Positions 1,074 through 38,933 of a DNA stretch of 64,000 nt are shown piece by piece (position 1 is the first letter of the stretch; the number at the start of each line of letters is the position of its first letter). The translations under genes were made by a program, and so were the position numbers. The stretch spans positions 7,564,001 to 7,628,000 of the forward strand of contig OU015569.1 in assembly GCA_907165135.1 (NCBI GenBank), given 5' to 3'. The stretch is from Oikopleura dioica. Its lineage: Eukaryota > Animalia > Chordata. The notes below the pieces were generated by a model, which did not search any database, was not told the origin of the DNA, and saw nothing but the letters and a program-made list of their open reading frames with translations.

Positions 1074-4000
1074 GAAGGTATTCTACACGACCTTCGAGCA
1101 AGTGACTGTGGATGAGGAAGTAACTGTCTATTCCTGTTGCGCCGGATGGGCAGAAGGAAGCGATCCTGGATGTACTGTACAAGTTTGCGGAGCGGGAGCT
1201 TGTTTTCACGGCGGCTATTGCTCCAAGGATGGCAAAAGGTAACGTCCTGAGCTTACGTTATGTTCTCTTTTTATTCTAGGAAATAGTTGTTAACTTATTT
1301 GCTTAGCTGTATTTGTAAAAATGGATGGACAGGAGACCGCTGTGAGCGAGATATTAATGAGTGCGAAGTCGGCAACGGACAGTGCTCGCACCAATGCTGC
1401 AACCTTGTAGGCAGTTACAAATGTAGCTGTCCACAAGGGTGGATTTTACTCGATGATGAGCGCACATGCTCTGACATCGACGAATGCCAGGAGCGGAACG
1501 GAGGCTGTGCCCATCAGTGTCACAACGTCGACGGAGGCTATCAATGCTCTTGCGACGTCGGATACAAGCTCCACAACGATCAACGTTCGTGTCTTCCGGT
1601 CAACCGATGCGCGCGAGGAAAGGCTTGTCTAATTATTGATGAGGATCTCCTCTCGACTTATTTTTCCGATATGATTTTGAAATGCCAGCGAAAGATAATG
1701 GCAATTGCGCTCAAAAGTGTATTGTGTTGAACGAACACAGCTTCAAGTGCGACTGTGAAGACGGCTTTGTACTTTCAGAAAATGGACGTAATTGCGAATT
1801 GGAAGATCCTTGCCTGAGAAACAATGCCGGCTGCCAACACAACTGCCAGTCTGTCGGGCAACAAGCAGTCTGTTCCTGCGATGCTGGTTTTCAACTCGGC
1901 CGAGATGGCAAGAAGTGTGTCGACATCGATGAGTGTGCCACTGACAATGGAGGTTGTTCGTTTATGTGCACAAATACAGAGGGCAGCTTCTTCTGTAGCT
2001 GTCAAGATGGTTATGAAGTGGGTGAGGACGGTTTCACCTGCTACAAGGTTGTGATCGAGCTCATTAGCAGAAAAAAGGTAATTTATTTACCATTGACATA
2101 TAACAACGTCAAAGCTCGTTTACAGTCATCGCGAATGCGATAATTTCCGAATTAATACATCGTGAGCGATTTTACGGAACATTACAGTTTTAATGCAATG
2201 TTTGGGAAGCAAAAAAGAGCAGCGCTATCAACACTAGCCTTAGCGATGATTTAAGCCTAAGCCAAAAAGTCAATGTTTATATAAGAATATTTAGAGATGT
2301 CAACCAGGACGCGACGGATGTCAACATTCATGCTCAGAAGACAGTGGCGAGGCGATTTGCAAGTGCCGTGATGGCTTTCAGCTTGAGGTCGACGGTAAAA
2401 GGAAAATGATTCAAATGCTATCATTTTTACAATGATCTGACTTCATAATTATAAGTTTGATTAATACTGGTTGTTACATCCGACATAAAAGTGATTGAAC
2501 CTTAAAAAAGTTGTCGAGACATTGATGAGTGCGCAACTGGGCGACACAAATGCCAGCATCAGTGTCGAAATATTATCGGCAGTTACGAATGCTCCTGCCG
2601 TCCTGGATTTGCGGTAGGATTTACTTAGGAAGCAGATTTTATCCAAATACAAACTTTTAGAAATAAGATTATTGTAAGCATTGAAGCCGAATCTTTTTAG
2701 TCATTATTGATGAATAAAAATAGAAATAATGATTTTTACAGATATCGGCCGACGGGGTTACTTGTGAAGACGTGAACGAATGTTACGATCAAAACGGTGG
2801 TTGTGATCACATTTGTAATAATGCTCAAGGTAAATTTGAAAGCCTGAAAGGCCAAAAACAAGATGATTATTCCCTTATGCTATACTTATCTCATTTAAAC
2901 CGTCATATAAGCTTAGCAAATGGACGTAAAATCCACACAAAGCTGGAGGGAGTGGAGCAGCTAGCACCAGCTGAGCTTACTACCGGGTGATCCCTCCCTA
3001 AACATCATTCAGATTGACATCAACTTGATCAGTGGATCATTTTTAAGATCCCATGCCAGCATTTTCTCATGCTCCTTCGAATAATTCTGTATGCGGTATA
3101 ATGGCTTTTTTACAAACTAAGATTTCCGAAAACGCATAAGTCAAAACTCATGACTTATGAAATTAATAATTATTAGGTACCTACACATGCGCCTGTGGAG
3201 GAGGTTTCGTGCTTGGTCGGGATGGACGCAGTTGCTCCAGAATCGATAATGACGAATTCTCCTATCACACCTCATCCTCCTCCCTCTCGTTTTTATCGTC
3301 ATACGACTACCGCTCTAGGCCAGACAAGAACAGCACAATTGTCCGTCGATATTTGAAGACACCTCCTGACCTGCTCACCGGAATAATTATCGAAAGATGT
3401 GCTCCAGGCAATTTCGGTGAAGACTGCAAACTTACTTGTGACGAGTGTAAAAATGGCACCTGTTCGGAAATAGCGGATGGTTGTATTTGTAATCCCGGGT
3501 GGGAAGGAGATCTTTGCGACAAAAAATGTAACGAGGGATTTTTCGGACAAGATTGCGCCAACGAATGCGAATGCAAAAATGGAGGCAGCTGCGACCACGT
3601 TACAGGAGAATGCAAATGTCCAACGGGCGTTTTCGGCGAATTCTGCGAAGATGGGTGCCAGTCAGGTAGGGTTGCATCTTTTATCGAAATTTACAAATAT
3701 GTGGATCACAATGATAACTTTCAAAAGGTCGCTGGGGCGAGGACTGCCAAAAGCGGTGCAAGTGTGGCCCAGGTGGAGGCCGCTGCAATCGAAAGTTCGG
3801 TGCTTGCTTCTGCGCACCTGGGCGCTATGGGAAAAATTGTCATCTTAGGTGTCCCAAGTTTACGTTTGGCAGCGGGTGCACCGAGAAGTGCTCGTGTAAT
3901 AAGCGTCGCTCGTTTGGATGTAATCCTGTCAGGCACTGGCTTTGATCTAAAGCAACATAATGCCTAAAACTTTTTGGCTAGGAGCAGGGCTGCCGAATTC

Positions 4001-32494: not shown

Positions 32495-33583
32495 TCATAC
32501 AATACAGCAGTCGGGTGGATCTTCGGGTTCGTACCCAAAATTTTCGCTGATGACTAATTTAACTTTCTCTATTCGTTTGAAAAAAGGTTGGTCGTTCCAA
32601 AAATAAGCGGTTCGGAAGAAGGTCTCCAAATGCCTGAAACGAAGTTTTGCGCATGAATTCATGATAAAGTATCTTACGATTTCCATATCCGGTAAATTTT
32701 TCGTGCCTGAATGATAAGGTAGTCGAGATACGCTGCTTTTGTGAAGACTTTTCCACGGATGACGATTTTTTTGACATTTTTCGATGGCCAAAGTGGAAAA
32801 CAAGCAGCTTCCAGCAAAAGACAGACCCACTAGAATCCATTCAAATAAGCGAGAGAAAATTACGAATTTTGTCTTACCCACTTGGAGTCATCTACTTTCG
32901 GCCGGTATTTCGGGAAATGGAGCGATACTAGAAGAAATATGAGGTAGAGCTGAAGTGGCTTTGAGCCGATGCAAATGCATTGAAGATTCGGTGGTGGTTC
33001 GTTGTTTTCCATGTGCTTAGATCTATAGAACTTCTTCAGTGCCTCGTTGAACTCATCACAGTCTTTGAAAGTCTTAAAAATATTTAAGAATTTATTCAAT
33101 CTTAATTGATAATAATGGCGGTTTAGATCGATATCGAACGCCTGACCATGCCAACTCGTGAAAAGCGGTTTCGCATGGACAGAACGAGCTTTGTGACGTG
33201 TTATCATGCAAGTGCGGTTGTTACCGAGACGAAAAACATGCTCAGAAAAAGCTGTGAACATCTTATAGTTTTTTGATAAATGATGATGGTAGCTATTTTC
33301 TCTTGAATTACTTTTCCGTAGCGAGTCGCTGGAAAATCTCAATCTCTAAGTAGAAAAATATTGATAAAAGAGTTGCATAACTGAGATAAATGATGTGAGT
33401 GAAAATTACGTGGAAGCTTTCAGTTCGAGCGGGGTCTTTAAAGTAGACAGTCCAGCCAGATTTTTCGTACTTGATTCTACATTTTAATTCGAGCTCTGCA
33501 AGCCGCTCATCTATTTGTGTTAATTCAACCAACTGTGAGAGATCTGACAAGCCCGCACGACTATGAGTACTGCTAGAAACCAC
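32495..33583 (-). CDS. Uncharacterised coding exons; either the C-terminal region of the RING-CW-PWWP gene or a separate co-oriented gene
   Basis: ORFs 33308-33583, 32860-33342 and 32495-32881 overlap in different frames across intron-like AT-rich gaps. Short exon-like pieces at 33640-33800 could link them to the upstream gene. No family recognised. Confidence 0.55.
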
Positions 33584-33815
33584 GAGTTAGTTAGAAAGAC
33601 TCATGGATCTAATGAGAATATTCATCACCTGTTTCCTGGCATGGAGGGCTCGAAGCTGTATAATTTTTTAAGCATCACCGCTAGAATAATTTAAATTTCC
33701 AGAAATTCACATATCTGGGTAAATTTTCAATCGCCGATTGAAAATCGTTACACCTGCGATCTTCTTTTCTTTTTAGAGAAAAGAAGAAAGCTTTTAATCA
33801 CCAAATAGCGCATTA

Positions 33816-35431
33816 TTAATTACATTGGGTGATTTTGGCTTGCGATTTTTTGTCTGCGTCACCTTGAATCTCTCCAGGCTGGTCATGGAAGCTGATCGAT
33901 TCGAGAATGTCATCTGTATCAGACTCTGATGTCACATAAGACGGGCGTTTTCGCTTTCGCTTTGCTTTCTTGGTCTGTTTTGCTTTTTGGTTGTGGAATC
34001 GCCGCGCCAGCCCGTTGCTGAGCACACACTGCTCGAGCCGTTCTTCGTTCGATAATCCACGGAGATCTTCTGCTTCGAAGTAAGCATCAATCAATGCCTG
34101 AGGCATCTTCTTCAGCTAAAGTCAACAAGTCCGGCACTTGAGTAGACTAGATTATACCTTTCCGTTCTTGCTAGGAGGTTCTTTAGGGATACCAGCGTAG
34201 TTAACGGTGCTCCGTGCTTCAACCCATGCCTGCGTGTGCCTTTTTCCTAAAATTTATGTATATTTCAGATCCAATAATTCTTAATACTTACCTAAGAATT
34301 CAACATGGTACTTGGTTGGGTTGCCATTATCGTTCGTGTCGAAGAAATTTCCTTCAATGGGGTCGTTGCATATAATCGCCGGCCAAGCAGTGAAGCCAGT
34401 TAATTTCGCTTGCACCAGGGTTCCCTCCAGCATATTGGAGTAGACGTAAGTAAGTCCAGCCTGCTCAGCCATCTTCTCGTACTGCAGATGGTTAACCTCC
34501 GGAATGCTGCAACTGAAGAACAAAAATATCGATGACGAACTTACTCATGCTCTAATACCTATTGAATGCCTCATCAGGATTGAACTCGCAATACCAAGGC
34601 TCGTCTTCGAATGTTTCAGCTACTTCTAGCGGTACGCGTCGCCATTTGAGACACTCTTCATGTTCGCATTGAATCCATGCATCATCTTCAAGCTCTTTCT
34701 GAATGCTCATGTTCGTATAGTTTGATTAAATGCATCTTACCGCGATCGCTTTAACGTTATCACTTTCTGTCGCTTCTTCTTCATCCTCTGTTGATGATTC
34801 GTGGGTGTTAACCATCTCCAGACCGGGTGTGTAGTTGTTCGATTTGAATGAGGGCACCTTGTAATCGATTTTGTTTTCATCGCAAAATTCGCGACGTCGT
34901 TTGCACTCCTTGTCGAATAGTTGAGGCACTGAATACGCAGATCTTAGTTACGCTTCTTCAATATTCTAGGAATTCTGATTCATAACTTCTGTGCGACGCC
35001 CTAATTAAAAACCACGAACTGAAGAGATCCTTACCAATTAGAAACGAAATGTCCTGTAGAGTTTGGTCGAAGCGGATATCTGAGAGGGGATCAGAGGGAT
35101 GAAGGCAAATATCGCACACTGGACATTTTATATCGTTCTTTGTCTTCAGTCCATCGTAGACGTATTTGAGGATGCACTAACAATATGGCTAGCAGTGAAC
35201 TTAGATGGTTGCATAAATAATCTTACCGATTTACAGAATGCGTGCATGCACTCGATAACCATCGAGGCATCAATTAAGTATCCTGTGCAAAGTGGACAAG
35301 TGAAGAATTGATTCAGTTCATGCGACTTTTGTCGGGGTTACTTCTGCTCACGAATAGTAGAAATAGATAAAGAAATATCCCCAAGCCTGAAATGTGACAA
35401 CGGTATCATCTGGCTGAGCCGCCAAGGACAT
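33816..35431 (-). CDS. Fusion protein: PCGF/BMI1-type C3HC4 RING + zf-CW + PWWP (ZCWPW1/2-like reader); 3' end may extend to 32495
   Basis: Spliced by eye: ELNQFFTCPLCTGYLIDASMVIECMHAFCKS/CILKYV...CPVCDICLHPSDPLSDIRFDQTLQDISFLI/VPQLFDKECKRRREFC (BMI1-like RING and helix). A phase-0 42-nt intron leads to AWIQCEHEECLKWRRVP...EPWYCEFNPDEAFN/SCSIPE (zf-CW), then VQAKLTGFTAWPAIICNDP...YHVEFLG/RHTQAWV (PWWP). First exon uncertain. Confidence 0.85.
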
Positions 35432-35867
35432 CTTCGTCTTCGGGGCCGCCCCTTCTTTTCTTCACTCCGCACTTTCTAAGAGGCAAGCGGCGCCTTCGTT
35501 GGCAGCGATGCCGTTCTGAACTTAATACCTAATGAGCTGGGTACGATGACGCCTTCCAAGAGATTTCCTCTGATTTCCTATCGACGTGAGAAAGGAGGAA
35601 ATGGAAAGTTTTGCAGCAGGACGAGCTCACTCCTCTGACTCGGGCGGCGGTTTTGTTTAACCTGCCCAGGGCCGTGGCGTAAATTGTGGCGTAAAGCATC
35701 GCCTAGCAGGCACTACGCACGATTTGATAAGCTTCTGCTGAGCCGTATTTTATCACCAAATAGCGAGGACCGTGATATTTTGAAAATTTAATCGATTTGC
35801 AACCGCGCACTTTCGTGTTAAGTTCGAATATTAGTTTATTTTAAGAAATAACGAAGGGAAAAGTAGA

Positions 35868-38800
35868 TTAATAGTTGATATGGGCGTTGAAAAACGTCGC
35901 TTGCGCCAGGAGGTCAATGAGAAAAGCGCCTTTCTTACCCCAGAAGTATAGTTTAGTAGAGCTTGTATGCCATTCGAATCCATCGATGCGCATACGCTCA
36001 GGTGAAGTAAAAAGCTCAATAGGTTGCAGATCTGCTGCTTTCAGGAAAATAATAAATACAGAAAAGTTATGGGAGAAAACGAAATAACGAACACATGGCG
36101 AGAATGAATACGCCGAAATAGGGGAACTTGAATCAGGAGCAGAGAAGGTCAATATATTTTCTGGAGAAAAAGAATCTTTATCTTCAAACATCCAAAGCCG
36201 AAGACTACAGTTTGATATTGATGCAAGGTAAATGATCTAGAAATGCTTTATGAGGATAAACTACTCAAACAAAACTAACCTTTGAAGAAGGAAAGGATTT
36301 CCAGAGGATACCCTGTTTCGGGCTTTTCGAGTTAGTGCAGCAGCTTTGAAATGGAGGTAGTGTAAGATGAATAATTGGTTCATTAGTTTGATCTGACAGA
36401 CTCCAAACGTGAATATTGCCATTCTGCGAGAGGGAAGCCAATAAACCACTAGAAATGTCAAGACTTGTCCTGTCAACTTTGTCTGAGAGATTCTGAAACT
36501 CGTCGACAACCGGGCATATAGAATGAGGTTCTGTCGAACGAAGGTCGACTTTCTGAAAGAGCTCAAAAGGAAAAATAGAATCGATTCAAACTACCTTAAA
36601 AGAGAAGAGATCGCTTGCTCCATCGCCGTTTGCATTCAAGAAAACAGAGATTTGTATAATCGTGAAACTTCCAACTGAAATAATGAATTGTCTCGAGGAG
36701 CACCAGTGGATATCTTTTGCGTAGCCTTCAACATTGATCTGAGTGGATTTTATAAAGCCGTATTTGCCATTTTTTCGATCCCAAACGCAAATGCGTCCAT
36801 CCTTTCCACCAGACGCCACTAAACAACCATCTGGAGACCATCTAATTGTGAGAACTTTTTCTGTGTGAGAAGATTCTCCGTTGGTTCCTAAATGATCTTT
36901 ATATATTTTCTTTCATAGTTTATCCGTACCTTTCAAATGGAGTATATAACTTCCGTCAAAATCATAAATGCAAGTGAGGCCACTCTCGTAGCCGAACGCG
37001 ATCTGACAGTTTTCAGCGCAACGAAAGTCAAATGCTGAGACTTTTTCTTTCTCTCGAACGATCTCTTTGGTGACATTGCTGGAACTCTTCAATTTTAGCT
37101 CGAATGATGTGCTTGATGAGCCGATCACGCATATTTTATTCTCAAGGAGATTCTGAACGACTGCACTGGTTTCTTTCTCAGAGATTCGTTGAATTCCTTG
37201 AGTTGAAAATGATTTGAAGCAAAACTTCTGGACGATTTCGAGATCTTCACGGGTTCCGTAAAGCTCTGTAAGAAAGTTTCTATTCCCCTTTTCGCTAGTT
37301 GGGAAGGATATTGACAGAAACGAGTACAAAATTGGAATTATTTGCGGAAACTTGTCGAGCCAATACTTGCAGAAGGATTCTTTAATAAGCGGACTCGATG
37401 AAAACACAGTCGGCGTTTCTGCATTGGCGATTTCTTTCTCGCAAAATTCGGTAAAATGTGCTGATTTGTTGCGGATAGCTTTCACCAAGTCGATAAAGGT
37501 GCGTTGATAGGCGTCAACGATCTTTCCTTTTTTTGCGTGGCCAAGGTGTTGTCTTCGAAGATGCTTGCAAATTTGGTCGCGCCAGTCTAGCTCGTCAAAC
37601 TGATAGTCCATGCATAGGATAGCATTTTCATCTGCATTCTTGAGTAAATCGTAGCACTTCTCAATATAATCGAGCTTCTCGATCTCGTTGAAGAAAGCGG
37701 GATGCTTGGTAATGGCTTCGACGCTTATTCGCTCGGTGAGATCGTTTTTTAACATAGTCTCGAGGAGTTGCTTGAAAATGGAATCCATGACGGCTTCTAG
37801 CGACGGCTCTTCCAGTGGAATTTTGTACCATTCATTTCCGAACGGATGGCCCCCGTCAGTCAGCACGAAGTAAATAACCAGACCCAAAGAATAGATATCC
37901 GACTTTTCGTTGGCTTTCTGAAACTTTCCGCCGCTATTCGAGAGGGTTTCAGGCGCGCTTTCGAGAGGTTCTTTGTGCTCTACTTATAACAAACAATGAT
38001 TTATGAATGAAAAATGAAGAACCTGTGCCTATAAGCGAGAGTACCACAGTAGGAGGTGTGAGAAGTTGCCTTCGCGATGGTGTCATCAGATTTTGTGATT
38101 TTACTCAAAGCAAAGTCTGATAGTGCGCAAGAATAGCCATTGTTTTCCCTCTGAATGAGGATATTTTCTGGCTTCAAATCGCGATGGATAATTTTTTCTT
38201 TTTTCGAGTGCGAGGAGTGAAGATACTGGATTCCGTCTACGATTTCTTTGAGTAATTTACGTTTTTCTTCTGCGGTTGGAGTCTCGTCACGGATCAACTT
38301 TGCTAAATCCAAATCGTACTTCTTCATGAAAATATCTAAGTGCCAATGGCCGTCTATCATCTCGTATTTACTGTATAAATAGCGGCAGATATTCTTGTGT
38401 TCATAATGGCTAAAGAAAATTTTCAAATATAGAATCTTTCGGATAGGAATTATCTTCTTATTAAAAATAATAATGAGTAAATTTTAAAAGTAAATGTAAA
38501 TTACCGAAGTACATCGATTTCGCGTTGGATTTTCGTTCTTGTATGTTCATCAATTTTCTGCCGCTTGACCGCGACAACACGTCCTTCGAGCTGTCCCTCG
38601 TAGACAGTGCCAAAGCCTCCAGTGCCAAGAATTTTTGGCTGACGGTAGCCTCGCCAGGGATTCCAATTTTAGGGAGTGCAAGGACATCATGAAAGGGCTG
38701 ACGCGTCTGGAGCTGTTGTCGGAGAGCCTGGTTTTCGGCCTCGAGAGAGCGCACGCGTTCCTCAAGAGTTTCAACAATATCCGTCAGTCTTTGCACCTCG

Positions 38801-38933
38801 TTACGCGAAGAGTAACATAAATGCTCAAACTCACTCCCTAGATCCCGGTACTAAATTAAGTTAAATATATCACCAAAGTGGCGTAAATTTGTACCTGTCT
38901 GAGAAGGGAGTCATATTCTTCGCTGTGGGTCAT
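35868..38933 (-). CDS. Cytosolic coiled-coil + IRE1/RNase L-like kinase + KEN ribonuclease + WD40 repeat protein
   Basis: MTHSEEYDSLLRQ/VQRLTDIVETLEERVRSLEAENQALRQQL (coiled coil). Kinase IIHRDLKPENILI, LSDFALSK, APE, SDIYSLGLVIYFVLTDGGHPF. KEN LDWR...YQRTFIDLVKAIRNKSAHF...YWLDKFPQII. WD40 SHTEKVLTIRWSPDGCLVASGGKDGRICVWD, LLASLSQNGNIHVWS, LASISNCSLRLW; stop at 35868. No signal peptide or TM. Confidence 0.85.

What the first reader, a model, noticed from the sequence alone, without database searches (positions are those of the whole stretch)
33816..35431. Polycomb PCGF RING fused to a ZCWPW-type zf-CW + PWWP dual histone reader
Seen: a BMI1/PCGF-like C3HC4 RING with its following IRFDQTLQD..VPQLFDKECKRRREF helix splices in frame, via short GT-AG introns, to a zf-CW with both cage Trp residues (WIQC...CLKWR) and a PWWP domain spaced as in ZCWPW1/2. 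No RAWUL domain was found. Established: PCGF RINGs heterodimerise with RING1 to ubiquitylate H2A and are normally recruited through RAWUL partners; ZCWPW1 CW+PWWP reads H3K4me3/H3K36me3 at meiotic hotspots. Inference: a self-targeting variant PRC1 subunit that could take H2Aub to active or meiotic chromatin marks. This would be notable if, as I recall for O. dioica (needs verification), canonical PRC1 subunits are missing.
Basis: partly seen in the sequence, partly recalled or inferred. Interest (0 to 1): 0.86.

Follow-up and report, generated by a model that had tools for sequence, protein, structure and literature searches.

The report
Polycomb RING fused to histone-mark reader
This Oikopleura dioica gene really does join a BMI1/PCGF-type Polycomb RING finger to a ZCWPW2-like CW+PWWP histone-methylation reader in one conserved protein, in an animal where PCGF was reported as not identified.

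Summary
Confirmed. On the minus strand, 35431..33816, eight exons give a 407-aa ORF. It is identical to NCBI models OKI2018_I69 XSR g15498.t1 (residues 1-392) and t2 (1-405). Seven introns are 42-106 nt; six are GT-AG and the first is GC-AG.

- **RING:** unambiguously PCGF-type. BMI1 scores 3e-27, PCGF1 8e-24 and PCGF5 4e-21, while the best non-PCGF RING scores 6e-7. The fold matches BMI1 at TM 0.86.
- **Reader module:** CW plus PWWP matches vertebrate ZCWPW2 over more than 90% of its length (1e-23 to 1e-29).
- **RAWUL:** none found.
- **Single mRNA:** intronless RNA contigs from several other larvacean lineages (58-94% identity) carry RING, CW and PWWP in one ORF. No read of this lineage crosses the RING-to-CW junction.
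- **Selection:** synonymous sites between lineages are saturated, yet the three domains stay 96-97% identical.
- **Annotation:** the Norwegian reference model (CBY09812.1) starts at an internal Met and lacks the RING. This probably explains the 2017 statement that PCGF was not identified.

The function is inferred, not shown: a PRC1-type RING subunit tethered to H3K4me3/H3K36me3. It depends on a RING1 partner that I could not search for. The 3' end is alternatively spliced, and the annotated long forms add an orphan 230-aa tail.

The parts
35387..35431 (-). Exon 1: ATG and 15 codons (MSLAAQPDDTVVTFQ)
   Evidence: An in-frame stop lies 11 codons upstream. The N-terminus MSLAA is conserved in all full-length homologs. 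The exon end at 35387 comes from reads of another lineage that continue into the exon-2 homolog, from cDNA HSP ends, and from identity to NCBI t1/t2.
35326..35386 (-). Intron 1, 61 nt, GC-AG
   Evidence: Sequence; boundaries as for exon 1.
35227..35325 (-). Exon 2: N-terminal arm (ELNQFF) and first half of the RING (C-x2-C ... C-x-H-x2-C)
   Evidence: Pfam zf-C3HC4 / zf-C3HC4_2, 3e-6 on the exon alone; aligns to BMI1 residues 9-40.
35035..35176 (-). Exon 3: second half of the RING (CPVC) and the PCGF-specific helix IRFDQTLQDISFLIV
   Evidence: The junction 35035|34928 is confirmed by a 99+% identical metatranscriptome contig (X1 record 3). BMI1 alignment.
34741..34928 (-). Exon 4: end of the PCGF helix (PQLFDKECKRRREF), then an acidic Ser/Glu-rich linker
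   Evidence: hhalign against a PCGF profile runs through residue 118. No Pfam family on the linker.
34699..34740 (-). Intron 4 (42 nt, GT-AG): the RING-to-CW junction
   Evidence: Removed in frame in cDNA contigs of other lineages: L001, L004, L005, L006. It is also removed in P0010 compared with the unspliced P0005 of the same species. Not covered by reads of this lineage.
34559..34698 (-). Exon 5: zf-CW with both cage Trp (WIQC, LKWRR)
   Evidence: Pfam zf-CW 5.7e-13; best PDB match is the ZCWPW2 CW domain, 1e-12.
34292..34512 (-). Exon 6: CW-PWWP linker and the first half of the PWWP (GFTAWP in place of PWWP; HVEFLG)
   Evidence: Pfam PWWP 3e-7; alignment to ZCWPW2 has only a 1-residue indel in the linker.
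34158..34246 (-). Exon 7: PWWP strand/loop region
   Evidence: The junction 34158|34115 is confirmed by X1 record 2. Isoform t3 uses an acceptor 6 nt downstream and so lacks Leu-Lys.
33816..34115 (-). Exon 8: PWWP C-terminal helices, basic cluster KKAKRKRKRP (33954-33983, probable NLS), tail, and the stop of the unspliced 407-aa form
   Evidence: Pfam PWWP extends to residue 323. Alternative donors after 33863 (GEIQ|) and after about 33824 (KITQ|) are seen in NCBI t1-t3 and in Atlantic cDNAs.
32495..33680 (-). Alternative 3' exons: 33680-33629, 33572-33410, 33072-32878, 32829-32678 and 32633-32495. In the NCBI isoforms they add about 230 aa ending in DCCIV. Coding status as part of this protein is uncertain.
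   Evidence: tblastn of P0152 onto the window and sequence. The junction 33410|33072 is seen in X1 record 1. In other lineages the same exons are entered in a different frame and the ORF stops after about 45 aa. No Pfam family, no RAWUL by HMM, and AF2 pLDDT 42.
35625..35745 (-). Non-coding block of about 130 nt upstream of the ATG, nearly identical between lineages (contains TTTACGCCAC twice); candidate promoter or 5'-UTR element
   Evidence: Alignment of window 35432-35880 with L005, between lineages whose synonymous sites are saturated. No Rfam match.

Best explanation
Shown: this is one conserved, transcribed gene (OKI2018_I69 XSR g15498). Its product has a PCGF/BMI1-type RING with flanking arm and helix (residues about 16-113), an acidic linker, a ZCWPW2-like zf-CW (166-210) and PWWP (235-325), and a basic NLS-like cluster. 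It has no RAWUL domain. Inferred: the RING keeps the PCGF job of pairing with a RING1-type RING to form an H2A-directed E3 core. The RAWUL-mediated recruitment by CBX/PHC/RYBP-type partners is replaced by a built-in dual reader that docks the complex on H3K4me3 and/or H3K36me3 nucleosomes. In O. dioica such marks are written, among others, by a testis-specific PRDM9 homolog. My estimate is about 0.95 for the architecture and about 0.35 for the mechanism.
For: Gene model: 8 exons, all in frame, identical to NCBI t1 over residues 1-392 and t2 over 1-405. Two introns are confirmed by 99+% identical metatranscriptome contigs. Fusion on one RNA: L001 (1285 nt) has a single ORF covering model residues 2-391 at 65% identity. 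L004 (83% identity) and L005/L006 (94%) are likewise intronless and continuous. P0207 is 100% identical to the Norwegian reference protein over 259 aa and carries the RING. RING family: BMI1 3e-27, PCGF1 8e-24, PCGF5 4e-21 and PCGF6 2.5e-14, against 6e-7 for the best non-PCGF RING and 3e-5 for RING2. hhalign to a PCGF profile gives probability 99.8. Foldseek to BMI1 gives TM 0.86 at 45% identity. Reader: ZCWPW2 at 1e-23 to 1e-29 over 91-95% of the 196-aa module. ZCWPW2 and ZCWPW1 are the top AFDB Swiss-Prot structural hits. Both CW Trp and the PWWP cage aromatics F/W/F align. Constraint: amino-acid identity of 96% (RING), 96% (CW) and 97% (PWWP) against a lineage with saturated synonymous sites. 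Context: PMC5240408 reports a testis-specific PRDM9 homolog and silent Y-chromosome regions carrying H3K36me3 with H3K4me3. PMC10638273 finds that RING1 and PCGF are mostly kept or lost together. Taken together with the strong constraint on this RING, I infer that a RING1 partner may have been missed.
Against: RNF1/RING1 is reported as not identified in O. dioica (PMC5240408), and PCGF RINGs are not known to be active E3s alone. I could not search the genome for RING1. BMI1 K62 and R64, which I recall as nucleosome contacts, are Pro and Asp here; however PCGF6 and PCGF3 also lack basic residues at these positions. The third CW cage position is His or Leu instead of Phe or Trp. No binding, ubiquitylation or expression data exist. 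The RING-to-CW junction is not covered by reads of this lineage. The true C-terminus is unsettled.
Confidence: 0.5

Rival explanations
1. It is functionally the larvacean ZCWPW2/ZCWPW1 equivalent, a meiotic or germline reader of PRDM9-type marks. The PCGF-derived RING works without RING1: as a homodimerisation or protein-docking module, or as an E3 for other substrates at marked sites. It would have no Polycomb-type H2A ubiquitylation.
For: RING1 is reported missing. ZCWPW2 is the closest relative of more than half of the protein. A testis-specific PRDM9 homolog exists. No separate ZCWPW-like O. dioica protein appeared in the searches. BMI1 K62/R64 are not conserved.
Against: The RING, its N-terminal arm and the C-terminal helix keep about 45-50% identity to BMI1 and 96% identity across saturated lineages. 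That is what one expects if the PCGF-specific partner surface is still in use. RING1 and PCGF are usually retained together.
Confidence: 0.3
2. The main product is the annotated 623-638-aa form. Its extra C-terminal region, with a conserved hydrophobic helix and a Cys-rich end (DCCIV), anchors or re-localises the RING-reader module, or it is a diverged partner-binding domain replacing RAWUL.
For: All three NCBI isoforms are long. The exon 10-11 junction is seen in a 99+% identical RNA contig. The TFKDC... frame is conserved at protein level between lineages (34% identity, E 1e-22), including the hydrophobic segment.
Against: In three other lineages the cDNAs enter these exons in another frame and stop after about 45 aa. 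L001 ends unspliced. There is no Pfam hit, scores against a RAWUL HMM are negative, AF2 pLDDT is 42 with mainly helices, and there are no homologs outside the species complex.
Confidence: 0.12
3. RING and CW-PWWP are two adjacent genes of an operon. An internal trans-splice site at 34699 makes the apparent fusion an annotation artefact.
For: Reading through the donor at 34740 gives a stop 5 codons later, and an in-frame ATG lies at 34710, just before the CW exon. O. dioica uses operons, and the Norwegian annotation has a CW-PWWP-only model.
Against: At least six independent RNA-derived ORFs from five or more lineages are spliced exactly there, in frame. The Norwegian model starts inside exon 4, not at that ATG. 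The linker is conserved and co-linear.
Confidence: 0.03

Closest known systems
BMI1/PCGF4 and the PCGF1-6 family (Psc)
   Same: N-terminal arm, C3HC4 RING and following helix align over about 100 residues at 45-50% identity (3e-27). The fold matches BMI1 in the RING1B-BMI1 structures at TM 0.86.
   Different: No RAWUL domain. There is a 6-residue insertion before the seventh Cys. ATT becomes ASM and VYKLVP becomes SFLIVP. BMI1 K62/R64 are Pro/Asp. A CW+PWWP reader follows instead.
ZCWPW2, and more distantly ZCWPW1
   Same: zf-CW followed after about 25 residues by a PWWP. Identity is 34-38% over more than 90% of the module. Both CW Trp and the PWWP cage aromatics are conserved. These are the top structural hits in AFDB Swiss-Prot.
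   Different: It carries an N-terminal PCGF RING that no ZCWPW protein found here has. The third CW cage residue is His or Leu. Among the 150 nearest CW proteins of 1.84 billion representatives, only the larvacean ones contain a RING.
Reader-tethered non-canonical PRC1 (for example KDM2B-PCGF1), and single-chain reader plus RING ligases such as UHRF1 (from general knowledge)
   Same: The concept is the same: an E3 RING module brought to chromatin by a built-in or tightly bound reader.
   Different: This is a resemblance only; it was not tested.

Membership tests
PCGF (Polycomb group RING finger) | N-terminal C3HC4 RING of PCGF type with flanking arm and helix | tested here: met
   BMI1 3e-27, PCGF1 8e-24 and PCGF5 4e-21, against 6e-7 or weaker for other RINGs. 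hhalign probability 99.8. Foldseek TM 0.86.
PCGF (Polycomb group RING finger) | C-terminal RAWUL (ubiquitin-like) domain | tested here: not met
   No PF16207 hit on P0152 or on its C-terminal 227 aa. hhalign aligns only the RING. A RAWUL HMM built from 21 PCGFs gives negative scores. The AF2 model of the extension is helical with pLDDT 42.
PCGF (Polycomb group RING finger) | Heterodimer with RING1A/B that stimulates H2AK119 ubiquitylation | not testable with these tools
   No access to the rest of the genome and no multimer prediction. RING1 is reported as not identified (PMC5240408).
ZCWPW1/ZCWPW2 | zf-CW with the two cage tryptophans | tested here: met
   Pfam zf-CW 2e-15. WIQC and LKWRR align to the ZCWPW2 CW of 4O62/4Z0R.
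ZCWPW1/ZCWPW2 | Third aromatic cage residue after the last Cys (recalled as F78 in ZCWPW2 and W303 in ZCWPW1) | tested here: inconclusive
   The aligned position is His or Leu (IPEVNHL), depending on a 1-residue gap. The residue numbers are from memory.
ZCWPW1/ZCWPW2 | PWWP immediately downstream with family-typical spacing and cage aromatics | tested here: met
   Pfam PWWP 1e-11. ZCWPW2 aligns over 91-95% of the CW+PWWP module. GFTAWP and HVEFLG align with W-P-R-W-P and HVEFLG.
ZCWPW1/ZCWPW2 | Binds H3K4me3 and H3K36me3; co-occurs with PRDM9 | not testable with these tools
   Binding was not tested. A testis-specific PRDM9 homolog in O. dioica is reported in PMC5240408.

The most novel reading that the evidence does not exclude
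Larvaceans have rewired PRC1. Their only PCGF-type subunit lost RAWUL and instead reads H3K4me3/H3K36me3 directly. H2A ubiquitylation, or another RING-dependent step, is therefore written on PRDM9-type dual-marked chromatin. The silent H3K4me3+H3K36me3 regions reported on the O. dioica Y chromosome, or meiotic hotspots, would be candidate targets. This would link the ZCWPW/PRDM9 pathway and Polycomb in one polypeptide.
Probability: 0.2. Interest if true: 0.85.

Novelty: new variant of a known kind. Interest (0 to 1): 0.62.

Why it matters
The 2017 chromatin survey of O. dioica listed PCGF and RING1 as not identified and left open how Polycomb repression works in this compact chordate. This gene shows that a strongly constrained PCGF RING does exist. 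It was hidden by a truncated reference model, and it sits in an architecture I found nowhere else: fused to a reader of active or meiotic marks, without RAWUL. That gives a concrete protein to test for H2A ubiquitylation, RING1 pairing and PRDM9-mark reading. It also gives a reason to re-examine the reported absence of RING1.

Tried and rejected
**Hidden RAWUL in the annotated C-terminal extension.** A local resemblance (LKKFYRSKHM against the RAWUL helix) made me test it. There was no Pfam hit, the RAWUL HMM gave negative scores, hhalign aligned the RING only, and the AF2 model was helical with pLDDT 42. Rejected.

**Reads across the RING-to-CW junction.** The only raw-read RNA runs (X6-X8) belong to another lineage and laid only on 35387-35462. 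The X1 contigs stop 22 nt short of the junction.

**The window's own protein through the representative search.** It was not found at 100% identity; fragments and P0007 led to it indirectly.

**Homologs of the C-terminal extension.** Only an unspliced fragment of the same lineage turned up. The protein-atlas search gave nothing above chance.

**RING1 in O. dioica.** I decided against typing a RING2 fragment into a metagenome scan: the hits could not be assigned to a species, and the larvacean copy would probably not rank among the 80 returned.

**Other dead ends.** The Rfam scan of 33000-36000 gave only a sub-threshold mir-974 hit (27 bits against a gathering score of 90), which I take as chance. 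Earlier findings of this scan gave no Polycomb, RING1 or PRDM9 leads. PCGF subfamily placement was not resolved, because no PCGF1 or PCGF5 sequences were available by id; by score BMI1 ranks above PCGF1, PCGF5 and PCGF6.

Full report
**Observation.**
The finding lies on the minus strand. From the ATG at 35431 I assembled eight exons:
- 35431-35387
- 35325-35227
- 35176-35035
- 34928-34741
- 34698-34559
- 34512-34292
- 34246-34158
- 34115-33816

They read in one frame to a TAA at 33818-33816 and give 407 aa. The seven introns are 42-106 nt. Six are GT-AG and the first is GC-AG.

Single-exon Pfam scans already find a C3HC4 RING (exon 2), zf-CW (exon 5, 5.7e-13) and PWWP (exon 6). The model is letter-for-letter identical to NCBI proteins CAG5098247.1 (t1) over residues 1-392 and CAG5098248.1 (t2) over 1-405. 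These are Oidioi.mRNA.OKI2018_I69.XSR.g15498 of Oikopleura dioica. So the window is that genome and the gene is annotated, although unnamed.

**Is it one mRNA?**
My single read-laying run gave limited help. The raw-read runs belong to a different O. dioica lineage and matched only 35387-35462. Their overhanging ends continue directly into the exon-2 homolog, which fixes the end of exon 1 at 35387.

A 99+% identical metatranscriptome (X1) confirmed introns 35034-34929 and 34157-34116, plus a downstream junction 33410|33072. Its contig stops 22 nt before the RING-to-CW junction.

The junction is instead supported by RNA-derived contigs of relatives.
- L001 (JGI, 1285 nt) has one open frame matching model residues 2-391 at 65% identity, with none of the seven introns.
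- L004 (Logan, 83% identity) runs from its own ATG through RING, CW and PWWP.
- L005 and L006 (94% identity) do the same and map co-linearly onto the window, with breaks at my exon ends.
- In a further species, P0010 is spliced at exactly this junction, while P0005 is the unspliced read-through.

Pairwise identities of 58-94% indicate at least five lineages or species with the fusion.

**What the domains are.**
*RING.* For residues 1-125, the PDB sequence search gives:

| Target | E-value |
|---|---|
| BMI1 | 3e-27 |
| PCGF1 | 8e-24 |
| PCGF5 | 4e-21 |
| PCGF6 (a short chain) | 2.5e-14 |
| TRIM5 (next family) | 6e-7 |
| RING2 | 3e-5 |

A profile of 21 PCGFs aligns to residues 15-118 with probability 99.8.

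An AlphaFold model has pLDDT 84-93 over the RING and 72-89 over the PWWP, with a lower value for the CW. It superposes on BMI1 from the RING1B-BMI1 structures at TM 0.86.

*Reader module.* The CW-PWWP module matches vertebrate ZCWPW2 at 34-38% identity over 91-95% of its 196 residues, with E-values of 1e-23 to 1e-29. ZCWPW2 and then ZCWPW1 are the top structural matches in AFDB Swiss-Prot, followed by PCGF3, PCGF1 and BMI1 for the N-terminal half.

In the alignment, both CW tryptophans and the PWWP aromatics (GFTAWP, HVEFLG) are conserved. The third CW cage position is His or Leu.

*RAWUL.* None is detectable by Pfam, by hhalign or by a purpose-built HMM.

*Uniqueness.* Among the 150 best CW matches in 1.84 billion representative proteins, only the larvacean sequences contain a RING. 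No non-larvacean protein with RING+CW+PWWP appeared in the two architecture-annotated searches.

**Constraint.**
Against the 94%-identical lineage, synonymous sites are saturated (pS 0.73-0.93). Amino-acid identity is nevertheless 96% in the RING, 96% in the CW, 100% in the CW-PWWP linker and 97% in the PWWP. The acidic linker (86%) and the tail (83%) are looser. All three domains, including the RING, are therefore under strong purifying selection.

**Literature.**
PMC5240408 (2017) states that homologs of RNF1, SUZ12, PCGF and SCMH1 were not identified in O. dioica. It asks how Polycomb repression works there. Its supplements describe a testis-specific PRDM9 homolog and silent Y-chromosome regions carrying H3K36me3 together with H3K4me3.

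The Norwegian reference protein CBY09812.1 / E4XGL4 (277 aa, named a CW-type domain-containing protein) starts at an internal Met in exon 4 and lacks the RING. A metatranscriptome ORF that is 100% identical to it over 259 aa does carry the RING. This truncated model is a likely reason PCGF was missed.

No paper in the searchable library links Oikopleura with PCGF beyond that negative statement, or with ZCWPW1. A broad survey, PMC10638273, finds that RING1 and PCGF are mostly retained or lost together. Taken together with the constraint on this RING, I infer that RING1 may also have been overlooked. I could not test that.

**Mechanism.**
*Shown:* a nuclear-type protein, judged by the basic cluster KKAKRKRKRP, with a PCGF RING and a ZCWPW2-like dual reader, and without RAWUL.

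*Inferred, about 0.35:* the RING pairs with a RING1-type partner, and the CW-PWWP places the resulting E3 core on H3K4me3/H3K36me3 nucleosomes. This would replace RAWUL-dependent targeting.

*Main rival, 0.3:* the protein is functionally a ZCWPW2-type germline reader whose RING acts without RING1.

*Other rivals:* the separate-mRNA idea is now unlikely (0.03). The annotated long isoforms form a further rival (0.12), described next.

**The 3' end.**
Donors after 33863 and after about 33824 splice to exon 33680-33629 and onward (33572-33410, 33072-32878, 32829-32678, 32633-32495). In the NCBI isoforms this gives 623-638 aa.

In three other lineages the cDNAs enter the homolog of exon 11 in a different frame and stop after about 45 aa. 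Yet the frame used by the NCBI models is conserved at protein level (34% identity, E 1e-22) and includes a hydrophobic helix.

This region has no Pfam family and no homologs elsewhere, and its model has low confidence. Whether it belongs to this protein remains open.

**Verdict.**
The protein is a new variant of known kinds, a PCGF RING fused to a ZCWPW-type reader. It is conserved in larvaceans and is of moderate to high interest.

Noticed in passing
window 35625-35745 (minus strand); L005 about 2960-3090: A non-coding block of about 130 nt upstream of the ATG is nearly identical between O. dioica lineages whose synonymous sites are saturated. It contains TTTACGCCAC twice. There is no Rfam match. 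It could be a promoter or a 5'-UTR element.
   Followed up: partly
window about 36200-38900 (minus strand); L005:26-2809, L006:75-2852: RNA contigs L005 and L006 carry the intronless ORF of the upstream kinase / Ribonuc_2-5A (KEN) / WD40 gene, the intergenic stretch and the RING-CW-PWWP ORF on one molecule. This suggests a shared transcription unit (operon) or overlapping UTRs.
   Followed up: partly
P0200 (CBY09812.1 / E4XGL4_OIKDI): The Norwegian reference annotation of this gene is truncated. It has 277 aa, starts at an internal Met in exon 4, and has no RING.
   Followed up: yes
window 32495-33680 (minus strand): The downstream exons encode an orphan region of about 180 aa with a conserved hydrophobic helix (LQLYLIFLLVSLHF) and a Cys-rich end (DCCIV here, PQCV in L004). 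It is read in frame with the RING-reader ORF in the Okinawa annotation but out of frame in the cDNAs of other lineages.
   Followed up: partly
L002:2600-3300 and L003:1870-2370: In another larvacean, 5-7 kb contigs hold partly spliced RING-helix and CW exons but no detectable PWWP. A MIOS-like gene follows. These may be incompletely processed or chimeric transcripts.
   Followed up: no
window 34158-34246 / 34115: Tandem acceptors 6 nt apart give isoforms with or without Leu-Lys (KNGKLKKMPQ against KNGKKMPQ).
   Followed up: partly
window 33881-33975 (+): A sub-threshold Rfam hit to mir-974 (27 bits against a gathering score of 90, E 0.025) lies inside the last coding exon on the opposite strand. 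It is probably chance.
   Followed up: no
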